Source of the DNA: Octopus sinensis
Lineage: Eukaryota
Length of the DNA stretch: 30,496 nt
Reading direction: 5' to 3'
NCBI RefSeq assembly: GCF_006345805.1
Contig: NW_021832702.1
Location: 1 to 30,496 of the forward strand
Part shown: piece by piece, positions 1-29,392 of the stretch
Numbering within the stretch: the first letter of the stretch is position 1
How the letters are laid out: every line of letters begins with the position of its first letter
The notes under the pieces: generated by a model
The model's database searches: none
What the model saw: the letters and a program-made list of their open reading frames with translations, nothing else
Told to the model about the DNA's origin: nothing
Position numbers and translations under genes: made by a program

Positions 1-500
1 CCATCATCCTCATCATCATCGACATCGTCATCATCATAATCAACATTTTCACACCAACACCCGCCATAATCATCATCACCACCACCACTACCATGGTCAT
101 CATCATCATCATTATCATCAACATCATCATCATCGTCATCGTCGTCGTCGTTGTGTCATTATTATTTCCCTACCACCACCACCACCACCACCACCACTGC
201 TATCATAAGCATCACCACTTCTATTAGTGCCACCACCATCAAAAACCACTACAACCATAGCTGACACCACCACCGCCGCTACCACCTACGTTGGCACTAT
301 CACCACCACCGCCAGCATCACCACCACCATCACCACCACCGCCGTCACCAAACATTATTACCATCAACACCACCACCACCATCCTCATCATCCTCACGAT
401 CACCTCCTCTGCCAGCGTCATCGCTACCATCACCATCACCACCACCACCACCACCACCACCACTATCAGCAACCACCGCCACCACCACCACCAACTCCTC
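1..500. repeat. (CAT)n/(CAC)n degenerate trinucleotide microsatellite
   Basis: Runs of catcat/caccac; explains the His/Thr/Pro-rich ORFs at 227-677. Confidence 0.9.
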
Positions 501-834
501 CCCTTTAATGCCGTCGCAGTTGTCGTTGCTGTTGTTAAGAAAATTGCTCGAACGACAATAAATACAAAGATGTATGGGCGGTGGGGGGCTTGCTGCTACG
601 CCCATAGACTCCCACCACACACACACACACACACACACACACCTTATTCTTGGCAACAGTAACTGCGGCAGCAGCAATTACAACAAGAACAAGAAAAACC
701 AACATTAATAAAAAAAAAACAACAAAAAACTAATCACGACATCAACACGAGAAGCAAAACAAAAAGAGGTTGTAACAACAACAACAACAACAACAACAAC
801 GACAACGACAACAACAACTACAGCAATAACAAAA

Positions 835-1424
835 CCTATTTCTTTACTACCCACAAGGGGCTAAACACAGAGAGGACAAGCAAGGACAGACAGAGGGATT
901 AAGTTGATTATATCGACCCCAGTCGTAACTGGTACTTAATTTATCGACCCCGAAGATAAGGCAAGTCGAAACCTCGGCGGAATTTGAACTCAGAACGTAG
1001 CGGCAGACGAAAACCTATTTCTTCTTTACTACCCACAAGGGCTAAACACAGAGGGACAAACAAGGACAGACACACGATTAATCGATTATATCGACCCCAG
1101 TGCGTAACTGGGTACTTAATTTATCGACCCCGAAGATGAAAGGCAAGAGTCGACCTCGGCGGAATTTTGAACTCTAACGTAACGGCAAGACGAAATACCT
1201 ATTTCTTTACTACCCACAAGGGCTAAACACGAGAGGACAAGCAAGGACAGATACACGGATTAAGTCGATTATATCGACCCCAGTGCGTAACTGTACTAAT
1301 TTATCGTCCCGAAAGGATGAAAGGCAAAGTCGACCATCGGCGGAATTTGAACTCAGAACGTAGCGGCAGACGAATACGGCTACGCATTTCGCCCGGCGTG
1401 CTAACGATTCTGCCAGCTCACCGC
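835..1424 (-). mobile_element. Head-to-tail trimer of tRNA-derived SINE family A (two 5'-truncated units plus one full-length unit)
   Basis: Units start at 835, 1014 and 1198 (cctatttctttactacccacaagg...). Only the last keeps the head (minus strand GGTGAGCTGGCAGAATCGTTAG, B-box-like GAGTTCAAATTCC). Matches copies at 4993-5181 and 14930-15161. Confidence 0.85.
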
Positions 1425-1494
1425 TTTGTAAATAGGTATATAACGTCAATAACAACAACAATATGAAGGTTGCATGTAAGAACAGGTGGAAGGA

Positions 1495-1661
1495 GTCGAT
1501 TACATTGACCCCAGTGTTTAACTGCTACTTATTTTATCGACTCCGAAAGGATGAAATGTAAAGTCGACATCGGCGGAATTTGAACTCAGAACGTACCAAC
1601 AACGGGCGAAATACTGTTAAACATGTCATCCAGCGTACTAACGATTCTGCCAGTTCGCCGC
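1495..1661 (-). mobile_element. Diverged SINE family A copy, duplicated together with its 5' flank
   Basis: Homologous to 1265-1424; the flank tttgtaaataggtatataa...gcatgtaagaaca occurs at both 1425-1484 and 1662-1721. Confidence 0.75.
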
Positions 1662-2055
1662 TTTGTAAATAGGTATATAATGTCAATAACAACAACAATA
1701 TGAAGGATGCATATAAGAACACGAAGTCTTGGTTGCATGACAAAAACAAACGCGATGGTCATGGTTAAAACGTTGTTGAAAGAAACGAAACATCAACAAC
1801 AGAAACAATAAACACAACAGCTGTAAAAACAACAGTAAGAAGAGCCAGTGTGTGTATATTTATGTGGTCAGATGCCATGCTTGAAAGACTTGTTAAATTC
1901 AGTCAGACAACGTCTTATCGTCTTAAAAACAAACGAAACGACGATTAAACAATGCTGCTTATTAATTCATGGGATTCTAACAAAATAGTGAGATTCCAAA
2001 CAAAGAGCTCGTGGTTTAGTCAGATTCATAGATTCATTGTTTCGGTGAGGGTAAT

Positions 2056-2565: not shown

Positions 2566-3127
2566 ATGGCGGCGGCGGTGGTGGTAGTGGTGGTAGTGGT
2601 GGTTTTGGTGGTGGTGGTGGTGGTGGTGGTGGTGGTGGTAGTGATGGTGGTGGTGGTGGTTTTGGTGGTGGTGGTGGTTTTGGTGGTGGTGGTGGTGGTG
2701 GTGGTGGTGGTGGTTTTGGTGGTGGTTTTGGTGGTGGTGGTGGTGGTGGTGGTGGTAGTAGTGGTGGTGGTAGTGGTGGTGGTTTTGGTGGTGGTTTTTT
2801 GGTGGTGGTGGTGGTGGTGGTGGTTGGTGGGGTTTTGGTGGTGGTGGTGGTTATAGCAATGGTAGTGGTGGTTGTGATGGAGATGAACGCAGCAATAATG
2901 TTGGTATTAGAAGTGTTAAAGGCGGTGGGAGTATGTCGTGGCAGTGAAGGAAGTGAGGCAGTGGTTGAGGTGGTAGTGGTGGTAGTAGTGATGGCAGTAG
3001 TGGTACGGCTTGGATGCTTATGGTGGGGTTGATGGCAGTGGTAGCGCTGGTGATGTTCGTCGCGGTCGCTATAGACGTCATCGTCATCGTGGTCGTCGTG
3101 GTCGCCGTCGTTGTCGTCGTCGTCATC

Positions 3128-3187
<60 letters not shown>

Positions 3188-3270
3188 ATAAAGTGGTGGT
3201 AGAGGTTGTGGTGGTGTAGGTTGTGGTGGTGTAGGTTCTGGTGGTGTAGACTGTGGTGGTAACGGTGCAG
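2566..3270. repeat. (GGT)n, (TAG)n and 15-bp GGTTGTGGTGGTGTA low-complexity tract
   Basis: Direct inspection; source of the Gly/Val homopolymer ORFs. Confidence 0.9.
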
Positions 3271-4193: not shown

Positions 4194-4226
<33 letters not shown>

Positions 4227-4228
<2 letters not shown>

Positions 4229-4408
4229 CATAGAGGTGTGCATTTTTTTTTATTCATTGTATGCATACTCGAAAAGAAGTACTCGATACTTATATGGAGT
4301 AGTATTTTATCTAGACACTTCGCGATTGCTTATCTGCTTTCAGGCTACGAAATCAGATACTTTACGCACAATACATACACCGCCGCACACACACACAACA
4401 CACACACC

Positions 4409-4439
<31 letters not shown>

Positions 4440-4459
4440 ACAACCACATATAATATATA

Positions 4460-4492
<33 letters not shown>

Positions 4493-4652
4493 CTCATAGA
4501 GGTGTGCATTTTTATTCATTGTATGCATACTCGAAAAAGAAGTACTCGATACTTAATATGGAGTAGTATTTTATCTAGACACTTCGCGATTGCTTATCTG
4601 CTTTCAGGCTACGAAATCAGATACTTACGCACAAATACATACAACGCACACA

Positions 4653-4703
<51 letters not shown>

Positions 4704-4992: not shown

Positions 4993-5181
4993 CTTAGCGG
5001 TATTTCGTCAGTCGCTACGTTCTGAGTTCAAATTCCGCCGAGGTCGACTTTGCCTTTCATCCTCTCGGGGTCGATAAATAAAGTACCAGTTTCACACTGG
5101 GTCGGTGTAATGGACTTAATCCCTTTGTCTGTCCTTGTTTATCCCCTCTATGTTTAGCACCTTGTGAGTAGTAAAGAAATA
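4993..5181 (+). mobile_element. 5'-truncated SINE family A copy
   Basis: tatttcgtc...gagttcaaattccgccgaggtcgactttgcctttcatcc...gtagtaaagaaata matches the family A reverse complement. Confidence 0.85.
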
Positions 5182-5607: not shown

Positions 5608-6006
5608 TACTCTTTTATTGTTTCAGTCATTTGATTGTGGCCGTGCTGGAGCACCACCTTTTTACTCGAGCAAATCGACCCCAGGACTTATTATTTGTAA
5701 GCCTAGTACTTATTCTATCGGTCTTTTTCGCCGAACCGCTAAGTTTACGGGGACGTAAACACACCAGCATCAGTTGGGGGGACAAAGACAGAGACACAAA
5801 CATATACACATACACATACATATATATATATATACATATATACGACGGGCTTCTTTCAGTTTCCGTCTACCAAAATCCACTCACAAGGCTTTGGTCGGCC
5901 CGAGGCTATAGTAGAAGACACTTGCGCAAGGTGCCACGCAGTGGGACTGAACCCGGAACCATGTGGTTCGTAAGCAAGCTACTTACCACACAGCCACTCC
6001 TACGCC
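5608..6006 (-). mobile_element. tRNA-derived SINE family B (bipartite, internal TA/CA microsatellite)
   Basis: Head GGCGTAGGAGTGGCTGTGTGGTAAG...GGTTCAGTCCC, CORE-like GCACCTTG(G)GCAAGTG block, tail (AGTAAAAG)n-like; seven more copies in the window. Confidence 0.85.
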
Positions 6007-6210
6007 TATATACATGATATTAAAATTGATAATACTATGTACGGAAATTTATGTCAACACAACATTATCAAGGTAATCCATATTGGTGAAATTTTAACGG
6101 AACATCTGAAATATTTTTAGCTGTTAAATATGCTAACAAAAAGAAACGGCAAACCAAATTCAACTTCAGAAATTCATTCATTCAACCGAAAACGACGTCA
6201 CTGAATAACT

Positions 6211-6430
6211 ACTCTTTACTCTCTTTTTAGTCTTTTACTTGTTTCAGACATTTGACTGCGGCCATGCTGGAGTACCCGCTTTAGTCGAGCAACTCGGCCC
6301 CGGGACTTATTCTTTGTAAGCCCAGTACTTATTCTATCGGTCTCTTTTGCCGAACCGCTAAGTTACGGGGACATAAACACACCAGCATCGGTTGTCAAGC
6401 AATGCTAGGGGGACAAACACAGACACACAA

Positions 6431-6499
<69 letters not shown>

Positions 6500-6665
6500 A
6501 TATGACGGGCTTCTTTCAGTTTCTGTCTACTAAATCCACCCATAAGGCTTTGGTCGGCCCGAGGCTATAGTAGAAGACACTTGCACAAGGTGCTATGCAG
6601 TGGGACTGAACCCAGAACCATGTGGTTCGTAAGCAAGCTACTTACCACACAGCCACTCCCGCGCC
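6211..6665 (-). mobile_element. SINE family B, full length
   Basis: Collinear with 5608-6006 and 14301-14728. Confidence 0.85.
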
Positions 6666-6723
6666 TATTTATTTAGTATAATAAACCCTATTAATAGGCA
6701 CTAACCTTATTTTATAACATGTA

Positions 6724-7230
6724 GGCGTGGCTGGGTGGTAAGAAATTTGCTTCCCAACCACATGGTTCCGGGTTTAGTCCCATTCTGTGGCACCTTGGGC
6801 AAGTGTGTTCTGCTATAGCTTCGGGCCGACCAAAGCCTTGTGGGTGGATTTGGTTGACGGAAACCGAAAGAAGCCTGTCCATCCCACACCCCCGCATTAT
6901 AGCTTGACAACCGATGTTGGTGTGCTTACGTCCCCAAAACTTAGCGTTTCGGCAGAAAATCCCGATAGAATAAATACTAGGCTTGCAAAGTTCGCCATTA
7001 CCTTCTGCCGGAGTCACGTGCAGATGATGTGTTTTGCTCATAAACACACACGTCGCCCGGTCTGAGATTCGAACCAGCGATCCCTCGACCGCGACTCCGC
7101 TGCTCTAACCACTAGGCTATGTGCCTCCACGCATTGACATATGGGGTCGATTTGTTCGACTAAAGGCGGTGATCCAGCATGGCTGCCGTCAAATGACTGA
7201 AACGAATAAACGATTAATAGAATAAAAAGA
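6724..7230 (+). mobile_element. SINE family B, interrupted by a family C fragment
   Basis: Family B homology at 6724-6985 and 7142-7230; foreign insert between. Confidence 0.8.
6990..7130 (-). mobile_element. 5' part of tRNA-derived SINE family C, nested in family B
   Basis: Minus strand GTGGAGGCACATAGCCTAGTGGTTAGAGCAGCGGAGTCGCGGTC...GGTTCGAATC matches the head of 11104-11490. Confidence 0.8.
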
Positions 7231-7629: not shown

Positions 7630-8460
7630 TGGGTGTGGCTGTGGAGGTTGATGTAGTGGGGGCATGAGATGAGGATAGTGATGGCGGTGGTGGTGGTGGT
7701 GGTGATTGTTGTGGTAGTGGTTGTAGTGGTGGTATTGATGGTTATGTGGGTGGGTGTGTTGTATTGGTGAGTTTCGTAATGGAGTTAGCGGTGGCTGTTG
7801 TGGTGGTTGTGATAGAAGTAATGATAGTTGTGATGGTGATAGTGGTAGCTTTCGTAGTGGTGGTAATGGTGGTGGTAGAAGTGATTGTGGTAGTAATAGT
7901 GGTGGTAGTAGTAGTAGTAGTAGTGGTAGTGGCGGCAATGTAGTGGTGGTAGAGGTGTTGGTTGTGGCGGCGGCGGTGACGGCGGCGTGGCGGCGGCGGT
8001 GGCGGCGGCGGTGGCGGCGGCGGTGGGCGGTGGCGGCGGCGGTGGCGGCGGCGGTGGCGGCGGGCGGGGGCGGTGGCGTCACGACGTGGCGGTGGTGAGG
8101 GTGGTAGTAGTGGTAGTGGTGGTGGTGGTGGTGGTGGTGGTGGTGTGGTGAAGGTAGGGGTTGTAGAGGCAGTGGTGGTGTTGGTAGTGGCTGACAGTGT
8201 AATGATAGTTGTGGTTGTAGTAAGTGTTAACAGAGATGACACTGACTGAGATTGAGGTAATAGCGATTGACACGAGGCGTGGTCGTGGTTGCTGTGGTCT
8301 TGATTGTGGTTACGGTGCTAGCAGTAGATTCTGAGGGCGTGGTTAAAGGTGGTTGTGGTATTGGTGCTAGTTGCGATGGAGATAATAGTAACTAGTTTCT
8401 GCTGTGGTTGTGGTTGTAGCAACTGTGGGTGGAAATATGGTATTTGTGGTTGCAGGTCTA
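7630..8460. repeat. (GTG/GTA)n low-complexity tract with a GGCGGCGGCGGT 12-mer block at ~7965-8080
   Basis: Direct inspection. Confidence 0.85.
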
Positions 8461-14185: not shown

Positions 14186-14843
14186 CAGGGTGCACCAAAA
14201 GTAGGCTTACAGCTATCACGTGGGCGCTTTAAATTTCTATTCAAACATTTTGTTACATTTAAATTTGTATCTTACAAACAGAAAAGGAAGCTTGACAAAA
14301 GCAGAATGGCTGTGTGGTAAGTAGCTTGCTTACCAACCACATGGTTCCGGGTTCAGTCCCACTGCATGGCACCTTGGGCAAGTGTCTTCTGCTATAGTCC
14401 CGGGCCGACCAAAGCCTTGTGAGTGGATTTGGTAGACGGAAACTGAAAGAAGCCTGTCGTATATATGTATATATATATATATGTATGTGTGTTTGTGTGT
14501 GTTTGTGTGTGTGTGTGTGTGTTTGTCCCCCTAGCATTGCTTGACAACCGATGCTGGTGTGTTTATGTCCCCGTTACTTAGCGGTTCGGCAAAAGAGACC
14601 GATAGAATAAGTACCGGGCTTATAAAAAATAATAAGTCCCGGGGTCGAGTTGCTCGATTAAAGGCGGTGCTCCAGCATGGCCGCAGTCAAAATGACTGAA
14701 ACAAGTAAAAGAGTAAAAGAGTAAAAGAAATTAGCATAGAATAGCGGTTTCATATTTTTTTAATGATTAAGATCTAAACTGTAAATATATAAATGCGAAA
14801 GAGATAGTTGAATAACTGTAAGCCTACTTTTGGGGCCACCCTG
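14186..14843. mobile_element. Tc1/mariner-type MITE (~32-bp TIRs) carrying a nested SINE B
   Basis: Left CAGGGTGCACCAAAAGTAGGCTTACAGCTAT (14186-14216); right arm reverse complement CAGGGTGGCCCCAAAAGTAGGCTTACAGTTAT (14812-14843) followed by TA. Confidence 0.8.
14301..14728 (+). mobile_element. SINE family B
   Basis: Collinear with other family B copies; (AGTAAAAG)n tail. Confidence 0.85.
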
Positions 14844-15996: not shown

Positions 15997-17070
15997 AACT
16001 CACGCACGTATATTCATAGGATAATTTGCTGCGGGCATGAAACCCGTATCATATATACATATATATGGATACTTATAACGGGTATGTGTTTACTGCAGCT
16101 TCACACGCCCTAATGCTTCATGCGACAATGTATGTGTGTGTGTGTGCGTGCGTGTGAGTGTATGTTTCTCCGCGCCTCTCAACTCACCCTCACGGTTTTT
16201 TTTTTTTTGTTCACCGCTTACGTGCGAGATTGGGAGAGAAACGTAACCCTAATGGTTAAATTTTACGGCAACAAAGTTCATACTGGCTGGATATACTGGT
16301 TAGTTGAATTCTTGTCACTTTTGATGATTTGATAAATAACTCCTAAATTACCACTTATTTTCCACATTCTGCCGGCAATATATTGCTTCCCTAGAGGGCA
16401 CAGCAAGCCGAATAATACAAACAACAATATATAACAAATGAAAAGAAACGATGCAAGTGTTAAGTAGCTGCGAATAAAAACATTTAATACAGCCATTTTG
16501 GATTTTACACCAGGCCAATTACGGGAGTTTAAATATTGCTTTATATTAAGGCAGTTAATTTACAATCATGTTTTGCTTTTCGCAATAATAGCCAAACTGT
16601 GACCTCATTGTTATATATTTTATCTATCGATTTATCTACCCATCAGTCTATCTATCAATATATCTAACTTCGGAGTTATCTATTAATTTATCTATTTGTC
16701 GGCCTATACAAGCTGCCTATATATCTGTACATATATCATGCTAATATACATATATATATTTATATATATGTATATATATATATATTCTTTTATTCTCTTA
16801 CTTGTTTCAGTCATTTGACTGCGGCCATGCTGGAGCACTGCCTTTTAGTCGAGCAAATCGACTACAGAACTTATTCTTTGCAAGCCTAGTACTTATTCTA
16901 TCGGTCCTCTTTTTGCCGAACCGCTAAGTTACGGGGACGTAAACACACCAGCATCGGTTGTCAAGCGATGTTGGGGAGGACAAACACAGACACACATACG
17001 CACACGCACAAACACACACATACATACACATACACGCACGCACACATACACACACACACACAAATATATT

Positions 17071-17274: not shown

Positions 17275-17476
17275 TATATATATATATATATATATAATAT
17301 ATATATATATATTATATATATATAATATATATACGACGTGCTTCTTTCAGTTTCCGTCTACCAAATCCACTCACGTGGATTTGGTCGGACCGAGGCTATA
17401 GTAGAAGACACTTTCCCAAGGTGCCTCGCAGTGGGACTGAACTTGGAACCATGTGGTTGGTAAGCAAGCTACTTAC

Positions 17477-18048
17477 CTCTACTCTACTTTTGCCCGATCC
17501 TGCCTTGAATACTGTTGCTTACTGTGGTCTCTCCATACGAAGCAAAGCATTATGAAAGTGGAAACACTCCAGAGGTCAATAACAAGAGAGATATGACAGG
17601 CATTGGCTACTGGGGTTGATTAAAAAACTCAATCTCAACTCTCTCCGACGCCGCTGTGAGCGCTACATTATTTGTGTGATATGGATAATATTTAATCAAT
17701 ATTGCACAAATGATGTTGGCATCAATTTTAAAATCCACCCAAGACTTGGCCGCCGCGCTGTTCACCCACTGCAAATATCGAACTCAAGACACATGACAGT
17801 ATTACAATACAACTACTTTAGTTCAACCGGTCCAGGTTTGCTCTTTTACTCTTTTACTTGTTTCAGTCATTTGACAGTGGCCATGCTGGAGCACCGCGTT
17901 TAGTCGAGCAAATCAACTCCAGGATTTATTCTTTGGAAGCCTGGAAATTATTCTATCGGTCTGTTTTGCCGAACCGCTAAGTTACGGGGACGTAAACACA
18001 CCACCATGCGATGTTGGGGTGGGGACAAAGACAGACACACAAACATAC

Positions 18049-18079
<31 letters not shown>

Positions 18080-18533
18080 CATACATACATACATACATAC
18101 GACGGGATTCTTTCAGTTTCCGTCTATCAAATCCATTCACAAGGCTTTGGTCCGCCCGAGGCTATAGTAGAAAACAGTTGCCCAAGGTGCCATGCAGTGG
18201 GACTGAATCCGGAACCATGTGGTTCGCAAGGAAGCTACTTACCACACAGCCACTCCTACGCCTATAGGCTTTCCTACACTTTCTTTAATATTATTACCAA
18301 AATACATCAAAACGGAAACAAAATTCAAAAGGTTTCTGAACAATTTTTTCCAAAACGTCCGGACTAACCTCCTACACCCGGATATGTCTCCAATAATAAT
18401 AACTCTTTGCTAGTGTGGGCCATGGTGGCCCATATATGACTGAGGTGTGAATCACGATCTAAAAGACTTTACCAGATGTTCTATTAAGTTAGACATGTCC
18501 TGGGACTATAATGGCCCAAACATGTCTAAGTTA
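17477..18533 (+). pseudogene. CR1/L2-group LINE ORF2 C-terminus and 3' UTR relic, split by a SINE B insertion
   Basis: LYSTFARSCLEYCCLLWSLH...KVETLQRSITREI*, then KKLNLNSLRRRCERYIICVIW...HPRLGRRAV, then after the SINE PD*PPTPGYVSNNNNSLLVWA. These match the post-RT motifs LEYC..WSP, LxxLxLxSLxxRRxR and PDxP. Confidence 0.75.
17841..18262 (-). mobile_element. SINE family B, full length, inserted in the LINE relic
   Basis: Collinear with other family B copies. Confidence 0.85.
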
Positions 18534-19214
18534 TCTCTCTATATATAAAACTGAGAATGTGTGTCTGTCTGTGTGTTTCCCTAAAACTTGAGAACTACAC
18601 AACCAATTTCATTCAAATTTTACACATGCGGGGAGTGTCATCGGCAAAAAATCTTAACTTTTTCCCTAGGGCGACCCCACAGCAGTATCATCTTCTCCAC
18701 TATTTCAGTATTACGTGTTAAAAGTGAAACAAAAACATCTCTCTTTTGTAATGCAGACACTTTCACTATTAAAGTGAAAATATTATATAACAAGGATGAA
18801 CCATTAACAATGGTCATCCATTTTGCTAGAAGATCCTCTATGGCCTTATATGCTACACCACAGGTTTTCAATTCATATTAATCAAAATAATATTCAATAT
18901 TTCACCCTTATTATGTGTATGTGTGTGTGTATTAGCAATTCGTATAAAATTGCATCAATGACTTGAACTTGAATAAGTGGTTTCACATAAATGGGGATTA
19001 ATTAAAAAGGTTTGTTATTATTATTACTGTTTGACTATTGTAATCACGTTTGTTGGTTCCTCGTCAGGGACGCGCTGTTGTGTTGCATTTGTTAAATAAT
19101 TGTAAACCGTAATCCTCCCACTTTCGGGGAAAATTGAAATTCTCTGCACTTCTATACAAGAAGGAGGACAAGATCCAATTGATCGAAATTGCAACAGAAG
19201 GGCCTACAATTCCA

Positions 19215-19749
19215 ATTTTTGAAAATTTTTTTCAAAATTTTCCCCAAATATTTTTGACAAATTTTTTGAAAATTTTCCCCAAAAATTTTGAAAAATTTTT
19301 TGAAAATTTTCCTCAAAAATTTTAGAAAATATGCTTTGAAAATTTTCCCCAAAAATTTTTGAAAAATTTTTCGAAAATTTTCACCGAAATTTTTGAAAAT
19401 TTGTTTGAAAGTCTTTTGAAAATTTTTACCGAAAATATTTTGAGAAATTTTTTGAAAATTTTCCCCAAAGATTTTTTTTTAATTTTTTGAAAATTTTCCT
19501 CAAAAATTTTTGAAAAATTTCTTGAAACTTTTCCCCATAAATTTTTGAAAACTTTTTCAAAAATGTTTCAAAAATATTTAGAAAATTTTTAGTAAATTTT
19601 GCGGTAAAATTTCTTGAGAATTTTCCCAAAAAATTTTTGAAGAAGTTTTTAGAAACTTTTCACCAAAATTTTTGAAAAATTTTTTGAAAATTTTCCCCTA
19701 AAATTTTTGAAAGATTTTTTGAAAATTTTCCCCCAAAATTTTTGAAAAG
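19215..19749. repeat. ~35-bp AT-rich minisatellite (GAAAATTTTCCCCAAAAATTTTTGAAAAATTTTTT-like)
   Basis: GAAAATTTTCC recurs at ~19269, 19303, 19339, 19374 ... 19687, 19721. Confidence 0.85.
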
Positions 19750-19755
19750 TCTGTG

Positions 19756-22700
19756 ACCTCTTTCGGCAAACTCTTTCATGTCTTTCGACACCCTCTTTGA
19801 TCTCTTTCGGCATTCCTTTGATCTCTTTCGGCACCCTCTTTGATCTCTTTCGGGACTCCTCTTTGATCTCTTTCGGCACCATCTTTGATCTCTTTCGGCA
19901 CACTCTTTGATCTCTTTCGGCACCCTCTTTGATCTCTTTCGGCACCCTCTTTGATCTCTTTCGGCATACCTCTTTGATCTCTTTCGGCATATTCTTTGAT
20001 CTCTTTCGGCACCCTCTTTGATCTCTTTCGGCATCCCTCTTTGATATCTTTCGGCACCCTCTTTGATCTCTTTCGGCACCCTATTTGATCTCTTTCGGCA
20101 CCATCTTTGATCTCTTTCAGCACCCTCTTTGATCTGTTTCGGGACTCCTCTTTGATCTCTTTCGGCACCCTCTTTGATCTCTTTCGGCACCCTCTTTGAT
20201 CTTTTTCGGCACCCTCTTTGATCTCTTTCGGCACCCTCTTTGATCTCTTTCGGCACCCTCTTTGATCTCTTTCGGCATACCTCTTTGATCTCTTTCGGCA
20301 CTCTCTTTGATCTCTTTCGGCACCCTCTTTGATCTCTTTCGGCACCCTCTTTGATCTCTTTCGGCATACCTCTTTGATCTCTTTCGGCACCCTCTTTGAT
20401 CTCTTTCGTCGGCACTCTCTTTGATCTCTTTCGGCACCTTCTTTGATCTCTTTCGGCATCCCTCTTTGATCTCTTTCGGCACTCTCTTTCATCTCTTTCG
20501 GCACCCTCTTTGATCTCTTTCGGCACCCTCTTTGATCTCTTTCGGCATCCCTCTTTGATCTATTTCGGCATCCCTATTTGATCTATTTCGGCGCCCTCTT
20601 TGATCTCTTTCGGCACCCTCTTTGATCTCTTTCGGCACCCTCTTTGATCTCTTTCGGCACCCTCTTTGATCTCTTTCGGCACCCTCTTTGATCTCTTTCG
20701 GCATACCTCTTTGATCTATTTCGGCACTCTCTTTGATCTCTTTCGGCACCCTCTTTGATCTCTTTCGGCACCCTCTTTCATCTCTTTCGGCACCCTCTTT
20801 GATCTCTGTCGGCATCCCCTTTGATCTCATTCGGCACCCTCATTGATCTCTTTCGGCACCCTCTTTGATCTCTTCCGGCATCCCTCTTTGATCTCTTTCG
20901 GCACTCTCTTTGATCTCTTTCGGCACCCTCTTTGATCTCTTTCGGCATTCCTCTTTGATCTCTTTCGGCATCCTTCTTTGATCTCTTTCAGTACCCTCTT
21001 TGATCTCTTTCGGCACCCTCTTTGATCTCTTTCGGCACCCTCTTTGATCTCTTTCGGGACTCCTCTTTGATCTCTTTCGGCACTCTCTTTGATATCTTTC
21101 GGCACCCTCTTTGATCTCTTTCGGCACCCTCTTTGATCTCTTTCGGCACCCTCTTTGATCTCTTTCAGGACTCCTCTTTGATCTCTTTCGGCATCCGTCT
21201 TTGATCTATTTCGGCACCCTCTTTGATCTCATTCGGGACTCCTCTTTCATCTCTTTCGGCACCCTCTTTGACCTCTTTCGGTACCCTCTTTGATCTCTTT
21301 CGGCATCCCCCTTTGATCTCTTTCGGCATATCTCTTTGATCTCTTTCGGGACTCCGATTTGATCTCTTTCGGCACTCTCTTTGATCTCTTTCGGCACCCT
21401 CTTTGATCTCTTTCGGCACCCTCTTTGATCTCTTTCGACACCCTCTTTGATCTCTGTCGGCATCCCCTTTGATCTCTTTCGGCACCCTCTTTGATCTCTT
21501 TCGGCAACCTCTTTGATCTCTTTCGGCATCCCTCTTTGATCTATTTCGGCACCCTCTTTGATCTCTTTCGGCACCCTCTTTGATCAATTTCGGCACACTC
21601 TTTGATCTCTTTTGGCATCCCTATTTGATCTCTTTCGGCATCCCTCTTTGATCTCTTTCGGCACCCTCTTTGATCTCTTTCGGGACTCCTCTTTGATCTC
21701 TTTCGGCACCCTTTTTGATCTCTTTCGGGACTCCTCTTTGATCTCTTTCGGTACACTTTGATCTCTTTCGGCACCCTCTTTCATCTCTTTCGGGACTCCT
21801 CTTTGATCTCTTTCGGCACCCTCTTTGATCTCTTTCGGCACCCTCTTTGATCTCTTTCGGCACCCTCTTTGATCTCTTTCGGCACCCTCTTTGATCTCTT
21901 TCGGCATACCTCTTTGATCTATTTCGGCACTCTCTTTGATCTCTTTCGGCACCCTCTTTGATCTCTTTCGGCACCCTCTTTCATCTCTTTCGGCACCCTC
22001 TTTGATCTCTGTCGGCATCCCCTTTGATCTCATTCGGCACCCTCTTTGATCTCTTTCGGCACCCTCTTTGATCTCTTCCGGCATCCCTCTTTGATCTCTT
22101 TCGGCACCCTCTTTGATCTCTTTCGGCAACCTCTTTGATCTCTTTCGGCATTCCTCTTTGATCTCTTTCGGCATCCTTCTTTGATCTCTTTCAGTACCCT
22201 CTTTGATCTCTTTCGGCACCCTCTTTGATCTCTTTCGGCACCCTCTTTGATCTCTTTCGGGACTCCTCTTTGATCTCTTTCGGCACCCTCTTTGATCTCT
22301 TTCGGCACCCTCTTTGATCTCTTTCGGCACCCTCTTTGATCTCTTTCGGCACCCTCTTTGATCTCTTTCAGGACTCCTCTTTGATCTCTTTCGGCATCCG
22401 TCTTTGATCTATTTCGGCACCCTCTTTGATCTCATTCGGGACTCCTCTTTCATCTCTTTCGGCACCCTCTTTGATCTCTTTCGGTACCCTCTTTGATCTC
22501 TTTCGGCATCCCCTTTGATCTCTTTCGGCATATCTCTTTGATCTCTTTCGGACTCCGATTTGATCTCTTTCGGCACTCTCTTTGATCTCTTTCGGCACCC
22601 CTCTTTGATCTCTTTCGGCACCCTCTTTGATCTCTTTCGACACCCTCTTTGATCTCTGTCGGCATCCCCTTTGATCTCTTTCGGCACCCTTTTGATCTCT

Positions 22701-24732
22701 TTCGGCACCCTCTTTGATCTCTTTCGGCATCCCTCTTTGATCTCTTTCGGCACCCTCTTTGATCTCTTTCGGCACCCTCTTTGATCAATTTCGGCACACT
22801 CTTTGATCTCTTTTGGCATCCCTATTTGATCTCTTTCGGCATCCCTCTTTGATCTCTTTCGGCACCCTCTTTGATCTCTTTCGGGACTCCTCTTTGATCT
22901 CTTTCGGCACCCTTTTTGATCTCTTTCGGGACTCCTCTTTGATCTCTTTCGGTACACTTTGATCTCTTTCGGCACCCTCTTTCATCTCTTTCGGGACTCC
23001 TCTTTGATCTCTTTCGGCACTCTCTTTGATCTCTTTCGGCACCCTCATTGATCTCTTTCGGCACCCTCTTTGATCTCTTTTGGCACCCTCTTTGATCTCT
23101 TTCGGCACCCTCTTTGATCTCTTTCGGCATCCCTCTTAGATCTCTTTCGAAATCCCTCTTTGATCTCTTTCGGCATCCGTCTTTGATCTATTTCGGCACC
23201 CTCTTTGATCTCATTCGGGACTCCTCTTTCATCTCTTTCGGCACCCTCTTTGATCTCTTTCGGCACCCTCTTTGATCTCTTTCGGCATCCCCCTTTGATC
23301 TCTTTCGGCACCCACTTTGATCTCTTTCGGGACTCCTCTTTGATCTCTTTCGGCACTCTCTTTGATCTCTTTCGGCACCCTCTTTGATCTCTTTCGGCAT
23401 CCTCTTTGATCTCTTTCGGCACCCTATTTGATCTCTTTCGGCACCCTCTTTCATCTCTTTCGACACCCTCTTTCATCTCTTTCGGCACCCTCTTTGATCT
23501 CTGTCGGCATCCCCTTTGATCTCATTCGGCACCCTCTTTGATCTCTTTCGGCACCCGCTTTGATCTCATTCGGCACCCTCTTTGATCTCTTTCGGCACCC
23601 TCTTTGATCTATTTTGGCATCCCTCTTTGATCTCTTTCGGCATCCCTCTTAAATCTCTTTCGGCATCCCTCTTTGATCTCTTTCGGCACCCTCTTTGATC
23701 TCTTTCGGCACCCTCTTTGATCTCTTTCGGCATCCCTTTTTGATCTCTTTCGGCACTCTCTTTGATCTCTTTCGGCACCCTCTTTGATCTCTTTCGGGAC
23801 TCCTCTTTGATCTCTTTCGGCACCCTCTTTGATCTCTTTCGGCACCCTCTTTGAACTCATTCGGCATCCCTCTTTGATCTCTTTCGGCATCCCTTTTTGA
23901 TCTCTTTCGGCATCCTCTTTGATCTCTTTCGGCACCCTCTTTGATCTCTTTCGGCATACCTCTTTGATCTCTTTCGGTACCCTCTTTGATCTCTTTCGGC
24001 ATCCCTCTTTGATCTCTTTCGGCATATCTCTTTGATCTCTTTCGGCACCCTCTTTGAGCTCTTTCGGCACCCTCTTTGATCTCTTTCGGCACTCTCTTTG
24101 ATCTCTTTCGGCACCCTCTTTGGTCTGTTTGATCTCTTTAAGCACCCTCTTTGATCTCTTTCGGCACTCCTCTTTGATCTCTTTCGACACCCTCTTTGGT
24201 CTCTTTCGGCACCCTCTTTGATCTCTTTCGGCACCCTCTTTGTTCTCTTTCGGCACCCTCTTTGATCTCTTTCGGCATCCCCTTTGTTCTCTTTCGGCAC
24301 CCTCTTTGATCTCTTTCGGTACCCTCTTTGATCTCTTTCGGCACCCTCTTTGGTCAGTTTGCTCTCTTTAAGCACCCTCTTTGATCTCTTTTGGCACTCC
24401 TCTTTGATCTCTTTCGACACCCTCTTTGGTCTCTTTCGGCACCCTCTTTGATATCTTTCGGCACCCTCTTTGTTCTCTTTCGGCACCCTCTTTGATCTCT
24501 TTCGGCACCCCCATTGATCTCTTTCGGTACCCTCTTTGATCTCTTTCGGCACCCTCTTTGGTCTGTTTGATCTCTTTAAGCACCCTCTTTGATCTCTTTT
24601 GGCATCCCCTTTGTTCTCTTTCGGCACCCTCTTTGATCTCTTTCGGTACCCTCTTTGATCTCTTTCGGCACCCTCTTTGGTCTGTTTGATCTCTTTAAGC
24701 ACCCTCTTTGATCTCTTTCGGCACCCTCTTTG
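19756..24732. repeat. 22(-23)-bp satellite GCACCCTCTTTGATCTCTTTCG, ~5 kb (~220-225 units from length/unit)
   Basis: Contiguous units with no spacers; recurrent variants GGACTCC, GCATCCC, GCATACC, GTACCC. Confidence 0.95.
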
Positions 24733-24967
24733 TATATATCTGTATATATATACGTCAAGATGTGTGTGTGTGTTTGTGTATGTGATTGTAGTTTATGCAC
24801 ATCCACAAATTAGCACGCATGTCGCTGAAATTTTAGGATTGCATTCGTCAACATCCTATCTGGGTTTTGTCAACTTATTTTTTCCCGAGGCACCGGCGGA
24901 TAGCGGTAAATACTTATTTTCAGCCATAACTTTTAGCGGTAAATATCTATTTTTAGCCATATAAAGT

Positions 24968-25180
24968 AAAGTGGAAAAGAGAGGCATAGAGTTTCACGGG
25001 AAAGACAAAGTGACAGAGGGAGAGAGAGTAAGTGACGACGTTCCTAAAAATCTATTTTCAGCCATAGCTTTCTGACGGCGTCTAACAAAAAAAACAAGAT
25101 AAAGAAAAGTGGAATGAAGCAGAGAGTTTCACGGGAAAGACAAAGTGAGAGAGAGAGAGTAAGTGACGACGTTTATAAAA
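24968..25180. repeat. 135-bp-period direct repeat inside the Helitron
   Basis: GAGTTTCACGGGAAAGACAAAGTGA...GAGAGAGTAAGTGACGACGTT at 24989 and 25124. Confidence 0.8.
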
Positions 25181-25950
25181 TATAAAATGCAAAATGTTTT
25201 GTCTTTTCTTAACCACGAGATATAGTGATCAAATTCAGGATGTTTTTGAAAGACACTATATTTTATAATCTTAGTATATATACTTTCTCACACAACAATT
25301 AAAATATATTTATTTTAAATCATTTATTTATTTGAAATCGTTTATCTTTCTCCCCTCTCTCTCTCTCACATTACTTTGGGTGCGAAAGAGTTTTATTTTT
25401 ATTTTACGCCCAGTAAAAAAGTGTTTTGTTGACAATCCATTTATTTAACATCAAAGAAACAAAGAGGTGAGTAGCAATTTGTCAGTGAATTGCACAATAT
25501 AAATGGGTACAATTTCCGAAGCTTCCACCACACCCAGTCCGTTTCACGGACTACAAAAGGTTTTTGTAGCATATTTGGAGGCCAGAGTAGTTGATTCCAC
25601 GCAAAAAAAAAAAACGATTATTTTTCTTAGTGAAAATCGTGCGAATGTTAATCTACAAATTTAACAACATTTTTCCATTCATTTCTGTTTATGAACTGTT
25701 TATGAACATACACAAAATATGCAATAGGTGTACTACGTACATGTGTGTTCGTGTCTGTTGCCCATATATATTTATATTATATTATATTATATATATATAA
25801 TATATATAATATATATGATATATATATAATATAACCAATTTCAACGGATTTTGCCCAAATTTGACGTCGATATTAGTTTGAAATAAAGAACTTGATTAGC
25901 TTAATAATCGTAACTTAATCCCGGGCAAGGCCGGGTTATACTGCTAGTCT

Positions 25951-25996
<46 letters not shown>

Positions 25997-26144
25997 TCTA
26001 TTTCCCTCTATTCCTATCTGCCCATCTGTCTTTGTAATTACCTGACTATCTATCGCTCTGTATACGTGTACATATGTGTATGAGTATCTGTGTAAGTATG
26101 TATGTCGGTACGCACACAATCAAATGACTCCATAAATATATTAT

Positions 26145-28569: not shown

Positions 28570-28762
28570 ATATATATATATAATATATATGGCAAATGAA
28601 AGACGGAAGATGGAATATACGAGAATTTATTATCAATCACGACATGAAGCACTCTGGACACCACTACGACACAATCCCAGAAGCACACTGCTCCTTCCAT
28701 TTAGCCAAGCCAAATCCACAGTAAGCTACCAAGTGTAAACCATTCGTTTTGCTATATATATA

Positions 28763-28923
28763 TACGACGGGCTTCTTTCAGTTTCCATCTGCCAAGTCCA
28801 CTCACAAGGCTTTGGTCGGCTCGAGGCTATAGTAGAAGGCACTTGCCCAAGGTGTCACGGATTAGGACTAAACCCGGAACCATGTGGTTGGGAAACAAGC
28901 TTGTTGCCACGCAGCTACCCCTG
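28763..28923 (-). mobile_element. SINE family B, 5' half only
   Basis: Homology ends at the internal (TA)n. Confidence 0.8.
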
Positions 28924-29007
28924 AGACTTTTTTGAGACTGTTTGTTAGGCCAGGCCGTCATAACTGTCCTAGGTTATTGCAATTTTAGTATATAATTACT
29001 ATATATA

Positions 29008-29392
29008 GGCGCAGGAGTGGCTGTGTGGTAAGTAGCTTGTTTACCAACCACATGGTTCGGGGCAAGTGTCTTCTACTTTAGCCTCGGGCCGACCAATGCC
29101 TTGTGAGTGGATTTGGTAGACGGAAACTGAAAGAAGCCTGTCGTATATATGTATATATATACGTGTGTGTGTGTATGTGTGCGTGTATGTTTGTGTGTCT
29201 GTCTTTGTCCCCCTAGCATTGCTTGACAACTGATGCTGGTGTGTTTATGTCCCCGTCACCTAGCGGTTCGGCGAAAGAGACCGAAAGAATAAGTACTGGG
29301 CTTACAAAGAATAAGTCCCGGGGTCGAGTTGCTCGATTAAAGGCGGTGCTCCAGCATGGCCGCAGTCAAAATGACTGAAACAAGAAAAAAGA
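29008..29392 (+). mobile_element. SINE family B with an internal deletion removing most of the B-box region
   Basis: ggttcggggcaagtg replaces ggttccgggttcagtcccactgcgtggcaccttgggcaagtg. Confidence 0.85.

What the first reader, a model, noticed from the sequence alone, without database searches (positions are those of the whole stretch)
18534..25947. Helitron-like element acting as a vehicle for a 5.5-kb satellite cargo
Seen: canonical Helitron termini (A|TC; GC hairpin, 8 nt, CTAG|T) bracket two abutting tandem arrays that make up about 74% of the 7414 bp. AACCAATTTC occurs near both ends (18601, 25833). Established: non-autonomous Helitrons/Helentrons with central tandem arrays seed satellites in Drosophila and oysters. 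Inference: a cephalopod instance caught mid-expansion, in which rolling-circle transposition may disperse and amplify a new satellite.
Basis: partly seen in the sequence, partly recalled or inferred. Interest (0 to 1): 0.8.

Follow-up and report, generated by a model that had tools for sequence, protein, structure and literature searches.

The report
Tandem arrays between decayed rolling-circle transposon modules
A 5.5-kb pair of tandem-repeat arrays sits among three worn copies of a short Helitron-type (DINE-1/Hel-2-like) transposon module in what looks like octopod DNA; this is a known kind of arrangement, and nothing here shows the 7.4-kb block ever moved as one unit.

Summary
A|TC is at 18533/18534. 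CCCGG-6 nt-CCGGG, then 8 nt, then CTAG|T lies at 25920-25948. Two abutting arrays (35-bp unit, 19214-19748; 22-bp unit, 19750-24732) make up 74% of the interval. AACCAATTTC occurs only at 18601 and 25833.

The flanks do look like rolling-circle transposon DNA, but of the DINE-1/HINE/Hel-2 layout: a 5' hairpin, a (TG/TCTG)n microsatellite, a core motif, and a 3' inverted repeat next to a palindrome. There are three same-strand module copies:
- A, 18534-~18700
- C, 24739-~24915, abutting the array end
- B, ~25700-25947

The shared 10-mer therefore marks homologous positions in two copies.

The 5' TC is one of 17 A|TC sites in 947 bp. The 3' hairpin is weak (z -1.1).

The 22-mer array grew in place: it holds a 1203-bp higher-order duplication at about 98% identity. 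No other copy, empty site or autonomous partner could be reached, so movement of the block as one unit is untested. This is at most a new member of a known kind, of modest interest.

The parts
18483..18533 (+). 5' hairpin. Arms TAAGTTAGACATG (18485-18497) and CATGTCTAAGTTA (18521-18533), 12 of 13 paired, 23-nt loop. ATTAAGTTA at 18483-18491 is the candidate 5' subterminal inverted repeat with its nested IR.
Evidence: DNA fold dG -13.7 kcal/mol, z -6.6, 0 of 200 shuffles fold as well. It is the only hairpin of this size in non-microsatellite sequence in the window; Markov expectation is 0.2.
18534..18700 (+). Module copy A. TC start, TCTC(TA)4, microsatellite GTGTGTCTGTCTGTGTGT (18559-18576), core-like AACCAATTTCATTCAAATTTTA (18601-18622), and a degenerate 3'-like piece TAACTT-TTT-CCCTAGGGCGACCCC-ACAGCAGTA (18655-18687) with no stable hairpin and no CTRR.
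   Evidence: The core matches the metagenome family motif at 15 of 22 positions (read from the sequence). The family profile does not detect it (E = 59).
18701..19213 (.). Spacer of about 510 bp, single-copy within the window, of unknown origin.
   Evidence: No match elsewhere in the window. The ORF here has no homologue.
19214..19748 (+). Array 1: an AT-rich tandem array with a 35-bp period (sub-periods of 23/24 bp), degenerate.
   Evidence: TRF gives 15.4 copies at 75% matches. It has no detectable relation to array 2 or to the core motif.
19750..24732 (+). Array 2: a 22-bp satellite-like array of 222 monomers (TCTTTGATCTCTTTCGGCACCC). A 1203-bp (54-monomer) higher-order duplication spans about 20420-23203. 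The minus strand has no stop codons.
   Evidence: ORFs reach 288 aa on the minus strand.
24739..24915 (+). Module copy C. A|TC start 6 bp after the array end, (TA)n, (TG)n, a core-like stretch ending in GAAATTTTA, and AACTT-T6-CCCGAGGCACCGGCGG-ATAGCGGTA. It has no hairpin and no CTRR.
   Evidence: Alignment with A has 72% mean column identity. Full-length z is 7-9 but is driven by the microsatellites. The part after the microsatellite gives p of about 0.01. nhmmer results are.
24897..25180 (+). Short local duplications: AGCGGTAAATAYYTATTTTYAGCCATA occurs twice, and a 138-bp-period repeat pairs 24961-25049 with 25099-25180 (84% identity).
25700..25947 (+). Module copy B. Microsatellite GTGTGTTCGTGTCTGTTG (25743-25760), an (AT)n run (25764-25833), core AACCAATTTC + AACGGATTTTGCCCAAATTTGA (25833-25864), 3' subTIR TAACTTAAT (25911-25919), palindrome CCCGGGCAAGGCCGGG (25920-25935), 8-nt spacer, CTAG (25944-25947).
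   Evidence: family profile E = 0.0011; A+C profile hits 25835-25934, E = 0.086. B's upstream DNA shows no homology to A's hairpin region.

Best explanation
The interval is an old, decayed compound locus built from DINE-1/HINE/Hel-2-type non-autonomous rolling-circle transposon modules.

The left module carries the family's 5' hairpin, a microsatellite and a core (about 18483-18640). The right module carries the 3' inverted repeat, a palindrome and CTAG (25911-25947). Two further partial module copies lie inside: the 3'-like tail of A, and C plus the 5' part of B. The two tandem arrays occupy the slot where this family typically carries its central repeats.

The 22-bp array reached 5 kb by in-place duplication of multi-monomer blocks (unequal exchange or replication slippage), not by transposition.

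Shown: the anatomy, the strong 5' hairpin, the match of B's core motif to an external repeat family, and the higher-order duplication. Inferred: that the modules are homologous to each other, and that the outer ends once belonged to one rolling-circle insertion or read-through unit. This copy looks resident and inactive.
For: - Layout matches published descriptions (PMC4067079, PMC7492417, PMC4344730): 5' subTIR with nested IR, microsatellite, core, central tandem repeats, 3' subTIR followed by a palindrome; Hel-2 adds TC/CTAG ends and a (CTGT)n microsatellite.
- 5' hairpin at 18485-18533: z -6.6. It is unique among complex-sequence hairpins in the window.
- The gap from hairpin to microsatellite is 25 nt. 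This equals the gap I counted by eye in one termite-contig copy; it was not computed across copies.
- B's 17 specified core bases recur in 22 metagenome stretches. About 13 of them, representing 8 distinct family sequences, have the (GTCY)n microsatellite and palindrome upstream.
- The family profile hits 25843-25867 with E = 0.0011.
- ATTAAGTTA/TAACTTAAT are the only two occurrences in the window, and one directly abuts the palindrome.
- Only the leftmost copy has the 5' hairpin and only the rightmost has the hairpin plus CTAG|T. All three copies are on the same strand.
- In-place growth: the 54-monomer shift shares 29 variant monomers. Blocks 20420-22000 and 21624-23203 are about 98% identical, against roughly 89% between neighbouring monomers.
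Against: - Module homology is weak once the microsatellites are removed (p about 0.01-0.04 per pair, and the segments were chosen post hoc).
- A's core is not detected by the family profile (E = 59).
- The subTIR match is only 9 bp (p = 0.046), against 11-15 bp in the described families.
- The 3' palindrome is no more stable than shuffles (z -1.1).
- The 3'-end structure is expected 0.5 times per window by chance.
- The right module lies 1.2 kb from the array, whereas in oyster HINEs it follows the last repeat directly.
- A and B each look like a complete short element.
- The modules are far more diverged (about 55-70% identity) than the array, so 'one event' would be very old.
- No external copy was found.
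Confidence: 0.42

Rival explanations
1. Three independent (or locally duplicated) short non-autonomous Helitron-type copies happen to lie around an ordinary minisatellite. The arrays sit between elements A and C, not inside any element. The reader's 5' and 3' termini belong to different copies.
For: - A has its own 3'-like piece right after its core. It aligns with B's 3' module: AAAAATCTTAACTTTTTCCCTAGGGC versus AATAATCGTAACTTAATCCC--GGGC.
- B has its own microsatellite and core just before its 3' end.
- Each unit is 160-250 bp, the size of a complete Hel-2-type element (250-bp consensus, PMC4344730).
- C begins with A|TC 6 bp after the array.
- Rolling-circle elements are common in octopus genomes: 43,735 to 121,101 copies (PMC6279123).
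- A subTIR match between copies of one family is expected whether or not they belong to the same element.
Against: - Three same-strand copies fall within 7.4 kb and none in the other 23 kb.
- Only the leftmost keeps the 5' hairpin and only the rightmost keeps the 3' terminus. If decay were random, that arrangement would be about a 1-in-9 coincidence.
- A and C have no recognisable 3' terminus of their own.
Confidence: 0.3
2. A single canonical Helitron (A|TC at 18534 to CTAG|T at 25947) carries the arrays as cargo. It is, or recently was, mobile and spreads the 22-mer satellite.
For: - The terminal motifs are present.
- It is the only 3'-end-like site in the window.
- Experimental read-through of a weak 3' end to a downstream terminator is documented for Helraiser (PMC4778049). 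A start at A that ended at B would produce exactly this unit.
- Elements that carry tandem repeats and seed satellites are known (PMC7492417).
Against: - The 5' motif is one of 17 in 947 bp.
- The 3' hairpin is weak.
- The strong hairpin would be left outside the element by coincidence.
- The internal copies A-3', C and B-5' are unexplained.
- There is no second copy in the window or in any collection reached.
- The array shows in-place block duplication.
- The flanking modules are much older than the array.
Confidence: 0.12
3. There is no transposon. The terminal motifs and weak similarities are chance in AT-rich, microsatellite-rich non-coding DNA, and the arrays are an ordinary minisatellite/satellite locus.
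For: - Markov expectation is 0.51 3'-end-like sites per window.
- Most of the A-C score comes from (TA)n(TG)n runs, which are everywhere in the window.
- Pairwise p values of 0.01-0.04 were obtained after visual selection.
Against: - The exact 17-base core motif is shared with an external repeat family in the same context relative to a microsatellite.
- The hairpin at 18485-18533 has z -6.6 and sits 25 nt before the microsatellite.
- AACCAATTTC and TAACTTAAT are each confined to these two sites.
Confidence: 0.1

Closest known systems
Cg_HINE elements of the Pacific oyster (Helentron non-autonomous elements carrying satellite-like arrays; PMC7492417)
   Same: The left flank has a subTIR, a complementary IR and a short GT/GTCY-type microsatellite, followed by a variable spacer and then central tandem repeats. 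The right flank has a subTIR followed by a palindrome. Some of these elements carry double arrays. Repeats and flanks share one orientation.
   Different: - Oyster arrays are short (a few to about a dozen monomers of roughly 100-170 bp). Here there are 222 monomers of 22 bp plus a 35-bp array.
- The oyster right flank follows the last repeat directly. Here it lies 1.2 kb away, with extra module copies in between.
- The subTIR here is 9 bp, not 11-12 bp.
- Family copies and empty sites were shown in the oyster and not here.
DINE-1 / DINE-TR1 and other HINEs (PMC4067079)
   Same: Composite structure: a 5' subTIR with a nested IR 3-22 bp away, a conserved core, a microsatellite, central repeats, a 3' subTIR and a 3' stem-loop. 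The elements are non-coding.
   Different: - DINE-1 subTIRs are 13 bp.
- Insertion is at TT, with T runs at the boundaries. Here the flanks are only loosely T-rich (gttct... / ...tctttta).
- No autonomous Helentron partner was identified here.
- My recollection that the DINE-1 core resembles the motif found here is from memory. It is a lead, not a test.
Hel-2 (BmHel-2/MITE01) non-autonomous Helitrons of Lepidoptera and their viruses (PMC4344730)
   Same: 5'-TC and 3'-CTAG ends flanked by A and T. A 3' stem-loop upstream of CTRR. A 5' IR and subterminal inverted repeats. A variable (CTGT)n microsatellite near the 5' end. A consensus of about 250 bp, the size of units A, C and B.
   Different: Hel-2 copies are at least 65% identical over the consensus across many species and were found in high copy number. 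Here only three weakly similar units were seen, and no sequence comparison with Hel-2 itself was possible.
Helraiser/Helibat 3'-end bypass and transduction (PMC4778049)
   Same: This provides a mechanism by which a copy with a defective 3' end (A, C) could read through to the next terminator (B). The result would be a composite from the first 5' end to the last CTAG.
   Different: Nothing here shows that such an event took place. It would be visible only as further copies of the composite.

Membership tests
Canonical Helitron (non-autonomous) | 5'-TC terminus next to host A | tested here: met
   A 18533 | TC 18534. The motif has no discriminating power: there are 17 A|TC sites in 18267-19213.
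Canonical Helitron (non-autonomous) | 3'-CTRR terminus next to host T | tested here: met
   CTAG 25944-25947 | T 25948. It is the only CTRR-T on the + strand in 24733-26100.
Canonical Helitron (non-autonomous) | GC-rich hairpin about 10-12 nt upstream of the 3' end | tested here: inconclusive
   A 5-bp stem with a 6-nt loop lies 8 nt from CTAG, and it is unique in the window. However, chance expectation is 0.51 per window, and dG is -5.3 with z -1.1.
Canonical Helitron (non-autonomous) | Repeated family whose copies share both termini, with an empty site lacking a target duplication | not testable with these tools
   No other copy in the window. No hits in viral, metagenome, GTDB or protein collections. 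No cephalopod genome is on hand.
HINE / DINE-1-like (Helentron non-autonomous) | 5' subTIR with a complementary IR a few to about 22 bp downstream | tested here: met
   13-nt arms with 12 of 13 paired and a 23-nt loop at 18485-18533. z -6.6. Markov expectation is 0.2 per window.
HINE / DINE-1-like (Helentron non-autonomous) | Short microsatellite downstream of the 5' IR | tested here: met
   GTGTGTCTGTCTGTGTGT at 18559-18576, 25 nt after the hairpin. The metagenome family shows the same arrangement.
HINE / DINE-1-like (Helentron non-autonomous) | Conserved core after the microsatellite | tested here: inconclusive
   B's AACGGATTTTGCCCAAATTTGA matches the external family (E = 0.0011), but the family was retrieved using that same motif. 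A's core matches at 15 of 22 positions by eye and is not detected by the profile (E = 59).
HINE / DINE-1-like (Helentron non-autonomous) | Central tandem repeats between left and right modules | tested here: met
   Arrays at 19214-19748 and 19750-24732. They are far longer than in described HINEs.
HINE / DINE-1-like (Helentron non-autonomous) | 3' subTIR (11-15 bp) complementary to the 5' subTIR, followed by a palindrome | tested here: inconclusive
   A 9-bp perfect match, ATTAAGTTA 18483-18491 with TAACTTAAT 25911-25919, directly abuts the palindrome. p = 0.046. These are the only two occurrences in the window. The match is shorter than in the family definition.
HINE / DINE-1-like (Helentron non-autonomous) | Insertion at TT or T-rich sites, with boundaries confirmed by empty sites | not testable with these tools
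   The flanks gttct / tcttttattt are loosely T-rich. No empty site is available.
Satellite DNA (genome-wide) | The same monomer occurs in long arrays at many loci or in heterochromatin | not testable with these tools
   Only one array was seen. The 22-mer profile finds nothing else in the window. Metagenome scan: 0 hits. The three GTDB hits are bacterial coding sequence with the peptide VPKEIK, from my own six-frame translation, and are chance matches.

The most novel reading that the evidence does not exclude
A cephalopod DINE-1/HINE-like rolling-circle element whose central-repeat slot has grown into a 5-kb 22-bp array. As a read-through unit running from the 18483/18534 end to the 25947 end, it would have copied this array to other loci and so founded a new octopod satellite.
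Probability: 0.12. Interest if true: 0.55.

Novelty: new member of a known kind. Interest (0 to 1): 0.3.

Why it matters
If the modules prove to be a real family, this would extend a known link to cephalopods. Helitron/Helentron non-autonomous elements associated with tandem arrays are documented in Drosophila, bivalves, mites and mosquitoes. My literature searches found no such report for cephalopods.

There are also practical points for annotating the source genome:
- The 7.4-kb block should not be entered in a repeat library as one Helitron.
- The left boundary probably lies about 50 bp upstream of the TC.
- The stop-free minus strand of the 22-mer array (ORFs up to 288 aa) can produce false gene calls.

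Tried and rejected
1. Protein-space searches for other copies. The satellite ORF, the 97-aa left-flank ORF and the 54-aa ORF across module A found nothing. A control with an ORF from the window's SINE did find Logan ORFs and an Argonauta hians protein. Cephalopod ORFs are therefore in the library, but the negatives remain weak evidence, because diverged non-coding copies rarely keep an ORF.
2. DNA pattern scans. The 22-mer dimer in metagenomes gave 0 hits. The 3' end in viral contigs gave 0. The core motif in viral contigs gave only chance phage hits, once with a wrong spacing of my own. The 22-mer in GTDB genomes gave 3 chance hits in bacterial coding sequence with the peptide VPKEIK.
3. Array 1 as a diverged form of array 2. 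A profile of 22-mers finds nothing in array 1. Rejected.
4. Array 1 derived from the family core motif. nhmmer hits were weak and high-bias (E 0.2-0.8), and there was no fuzzy match at up to 5 errors. Not supported.
5. Homology of the spacers after A and after C. Not significant.
6. Homology of B's upstream DNA to A's hairpin region. None.
7. Rfam and tRNA scans of the window. Nothing.
8. A paralogous empty site inside the window. None.


Full report
**What is there**

A|TC lies at 18533/18534. CCCGG-GCAAGG-CCGGG lies at 25920-25935, followed by TTATACTG and CTAG|T at 25944-25948.

Tandem Repeats Finder reports two arrays:
- an AT-rich array with a 35-bp period at 19214-19748 (75% matches);
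- a 22-bp array at 19750-24732 (consensus TCTTTGATCTCTTTCGGCACCC, 88-89% matches).

I segmented the second array into 222 monomers, 67 of them identical to the consensus. Together the arrays cover 5518 of 7414 bp. AACCAATTTC occurs only at 18601 and 25833, both on the + strand, against 0.15 expected.

**How much of the 'canonical termini' exceeds chance**

I scanned both strands for a GC-rich stem of at least 5 bp, a 3-8 nt loop, a 4-14 nt spacer and CTRR followed by T. Only the site at 25920-25948 qualifies, but first-order Markov simulations of the window give 0.51 such sites.

As single-stranded DNA the hairpin has dG -5.3 kcal/mol and z -1.1; 25 of 200 shuffles fold at least as well. A|TC occurs 17 times in the 947 bp between the upstream SINE copy and array 1. 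The terminal motifs alone therefore do not define an element.

**What the flanks resemble**

The right flank contains AACGGATTTTGCCCAAATTTGA (25843-25864). I scanned metagenome contigs for AACGGATTTTNNNNAAATTTG followed 70-100 nt later by CTAGT. This returned 22 stretches.

About 13 of these, representing 8 distinct sequences and mostly from termite-gut samples, are copies of one eukaryotic repeat. In it the motif lies just downstream of a (GTCY)n microsatellite, which in turn lies about 25 nt downstream of a palindromic TTCGCAAAATTGCGAA.

That order is the published left-module layout of several families:
- DINE-1/HINE elements: 13-bp subTIRs, an IR 3-22 bp away, a microsatellite, a conserved core, central repeats and a 3' stem-loop (PMC4067079).
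- Oyster Cg_HINEs: subTIR, IR and a GTCY/GTCC microsatellite in the left flank, and a subTIR plus palindrome in the right flank (PMC7492417).
- Lepidopteran Hel-2: TC/CTAG ends, a 3' hairpin, a 5' IR, subterminal inverted repeats, a (CTGT)n microsatellite and a 250-bp consensus (PMC4344730).

A profile of the external family hits 25843-25867 with E = 0.0011. This is partly circular, because the family was retrieved with that motif. The context around the motif, however, was not part of the query.

**Three module copies, not two ends**

The window has the same order of parts three times on the + strand: (TA)n, a (TG/TCTG)n microsatellite, an AAC..ATTT..AAATTT core, then a T-rich stretch with CCC and a GC-rich piece.
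- A: 18534-~18700
- C: 24739-~24915
- B: ~25700-25947

C starts with A|TC and TCTGTATATATATA only 6 bp after the last 22-mer. This parallels A's TCTCTCTATATATA.

The full A-C alignment gives z = 7-9, but stringent scoring shows that the microsatellites carry most of that score. After removing them, the remaining ~120 nt still align better than dinucleotide shuffles:
- A-C: 10 of 1000 shuffles reach the observed score
- A-B: 12 of 1000
- C-B: 38 of 1000

A-C and A-B also score near the maximum of 600 random window segments. A profile built from A and C alone finds B's distal half colinearly (25835-25934, E = 0.086).

These values are modest, and I chose the segments after reading the sequence. 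I therefore rate module homology as probable, not proven.

TAAGTTAGACATG (18485-18497) pairs with CATGTCTAAGTTA (18521-18533). The fold has dG -13.7 kcal/mol and z -6.6; 0 of 200 shuffles fold as well.

Among hairpins with 13-nt arms and at most one mismatch, it is the only one in non-microsatellite sequence in the window. Markov expectation is 0.2. It ends exactly at the A before the TC and sits 25 nt before A's microsatellite. That equals the spacing I counted by eye in a termite-contig copy; it was not computed across copies.

Its left arm is nested in ATTAAGTTA (18483-18491). The only other occurrence of that sequence in the window, in reverse complement, is TAACTTAAT (25911-25919), which directly abuts the 3' palindrome. 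A 9-bp match has p = 0.046.

This fits the DINE-1 scheme of a 5' subTIR with a nested IR and a 3' subTIR followed by a stem-loop. By that reading the element starts near 18480, not 18534. The subTIR match shows family relationship between the ends. It does not show that they belong to one element.

**One element or several**

In favour of one old unit, or one read-through or tandem product:
- Only the leftmost copy has the 5' hairpin (B's upstream DNA shows no similarity to it).
- Only the rightmost copy has the hairpin plus CTAG|T.
- All copies share one orientation, and there are none in the other 23 kb.
- Two different arrays within one element are known in oyster HINEs.
- Bypass of a poor 3' end to a downstream terminator is experimentally established for Helitrons (PMC4778049).

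In favour of separate short elements:
- A has a 3'-like piece immediately after its core, which aligns with B's.
- B has its own microsatellite and core.
- Each unit is the size of a whole Hel-2-type element.
- The modules are about 55-70% identical, while the array is 89-98% homogeneous.
- Rolling-circle copies number 43,735 to 121,101 in octopus genomes (PMC6279123).

**How the array grew**

At a shift of 54 monomers (1203 bp), 29 non-consensus monomers recur. No other shift gives more than 7.

Blocks 20420-22000 and 21624-23203 align at about 98% identity. This is somewhat inflated by register shifts within the repeat. Between neighbouring monomers identity is roughly 89%. That corresponds to about 2.3 copies of a 1203-bp higher-order unit.

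This is the signature of in-place unequal exchange or slippage. It needs no transposition, and it says nothing for or against dispersal.

I found no relation between the 22-mer and array 1, the modules, or anything else in the window.

**Reach of the negative results**

No cephalopod genome is available in these tools. The following found no further copy:
- searches with the satellite ORF, a left-flank ORF and an ORF across module A;
- scans of viral, metagenome and GTDB contigs.

The three GTDB hits of the 22-mer are bacterial coding sequence with the peptide VPKEIK, from my own six-frame translation. A control ORF from the window's SINE did find Logan ORFs and an Argonauta hians protein. This supports an octopod origin and shows that cephalopod ORFs are present in the library. 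Diverged non-coding repeats rarely keep ORFs, so absence here is weak evidence.

**Verdict**

The locus belongs to a known kind of arrangement: tandem repeats associated with non-autonomous Helitron-superfamily elements. At most it is a new member from a cephalopod. The boundary should be corrected and the internal structure is more complex than proposed. There is no evidence that the 7.4-kb block is or was a vehicle. The deciding tests are genome-wide copy and empty-site analyses, listed under next steps.

Noticed in passing
window 5608-6010, 6225-6668, 6721-6990, 14304-14725, 16786-17057, 17297-17477, 17837-18266, 28754-28922, 29004-29389: At least nine copies (77-93% identical) of a SINE-like repeat of about 420 bp. 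By eye it has a tRNA-like head, though ARAGORN and Rfam call nothing. It has a central (TA)n(TG)n...TTTGTCCCC microsatellite and a conserved tail. An ORF from it matches Logan ORFs and an Argonauta hians hypothetical protein, which fits an octopod source. Its internal microsatellite resembles the one in modules A, C and B.
   Followed up: partly
window 19649-24806, minus strand: The reverse strand of the 22-mer unit has no stop codon in any frame. The array therefore yields overlapping ORFs of up to 288 aa (repeating VPKEIKEGAERDQRGCRKRSKR) that a gene caller could report as proteins. The VPKEIK stretch gives chance DNA matches to bacterial coding sequence (L040-L042).
   Followed up: yes
window 831-1721 and 5065-5181: A tandem repeat with 181-bp and 237-bp periods (2-3 copies, 85-87% matches). 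A related inverted piece lies at 5065-5181 (85% complementary to 837-953). This is another interspersed repeat family, not examined.
   Followed up: no
window 4201-4701: A 264-bp unit repeated 1.9 times (93% matches), bounded by (AT)n and (CA)n microsatellites.
   Followed up: no
window 2-493, 2577-3260, 7678-8190: Long, impure trinucleotide tracts: CAT/CAC, GGT/GTA and GGC/GTG. They create spurious low-complexity ORFs of 90-185 aa on both strands. No real gene was seen anywhere in the window.
   Followed up: no
window 24897-25180: Between modules C and B, AGCGGTAAATAYYTATTTTYAGCCATA occurs twice, 39 bp apart. A block of about 89 bp also recurs at a 138-bp spacing (24961-25049 and 25099-25180, 84% identity). 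The origin is unknown.
   Followed up: partly
L020, L023, L024, L025, L026, L028, L032 (metagenome contigs, mostly termite gut): These contigs carry copies of a repeat that looks like a host (eukaryotic) DINE-1/HINE-like element. It has a TTCGCAAAATTGCGAA palindrome, a (GTCY)n microsatellite and AACGGATTTTCATGAAATTTGATATTTGAG. This suggests eukaryotic host DNA in those metagenome assemblies.
   Followed up: partly
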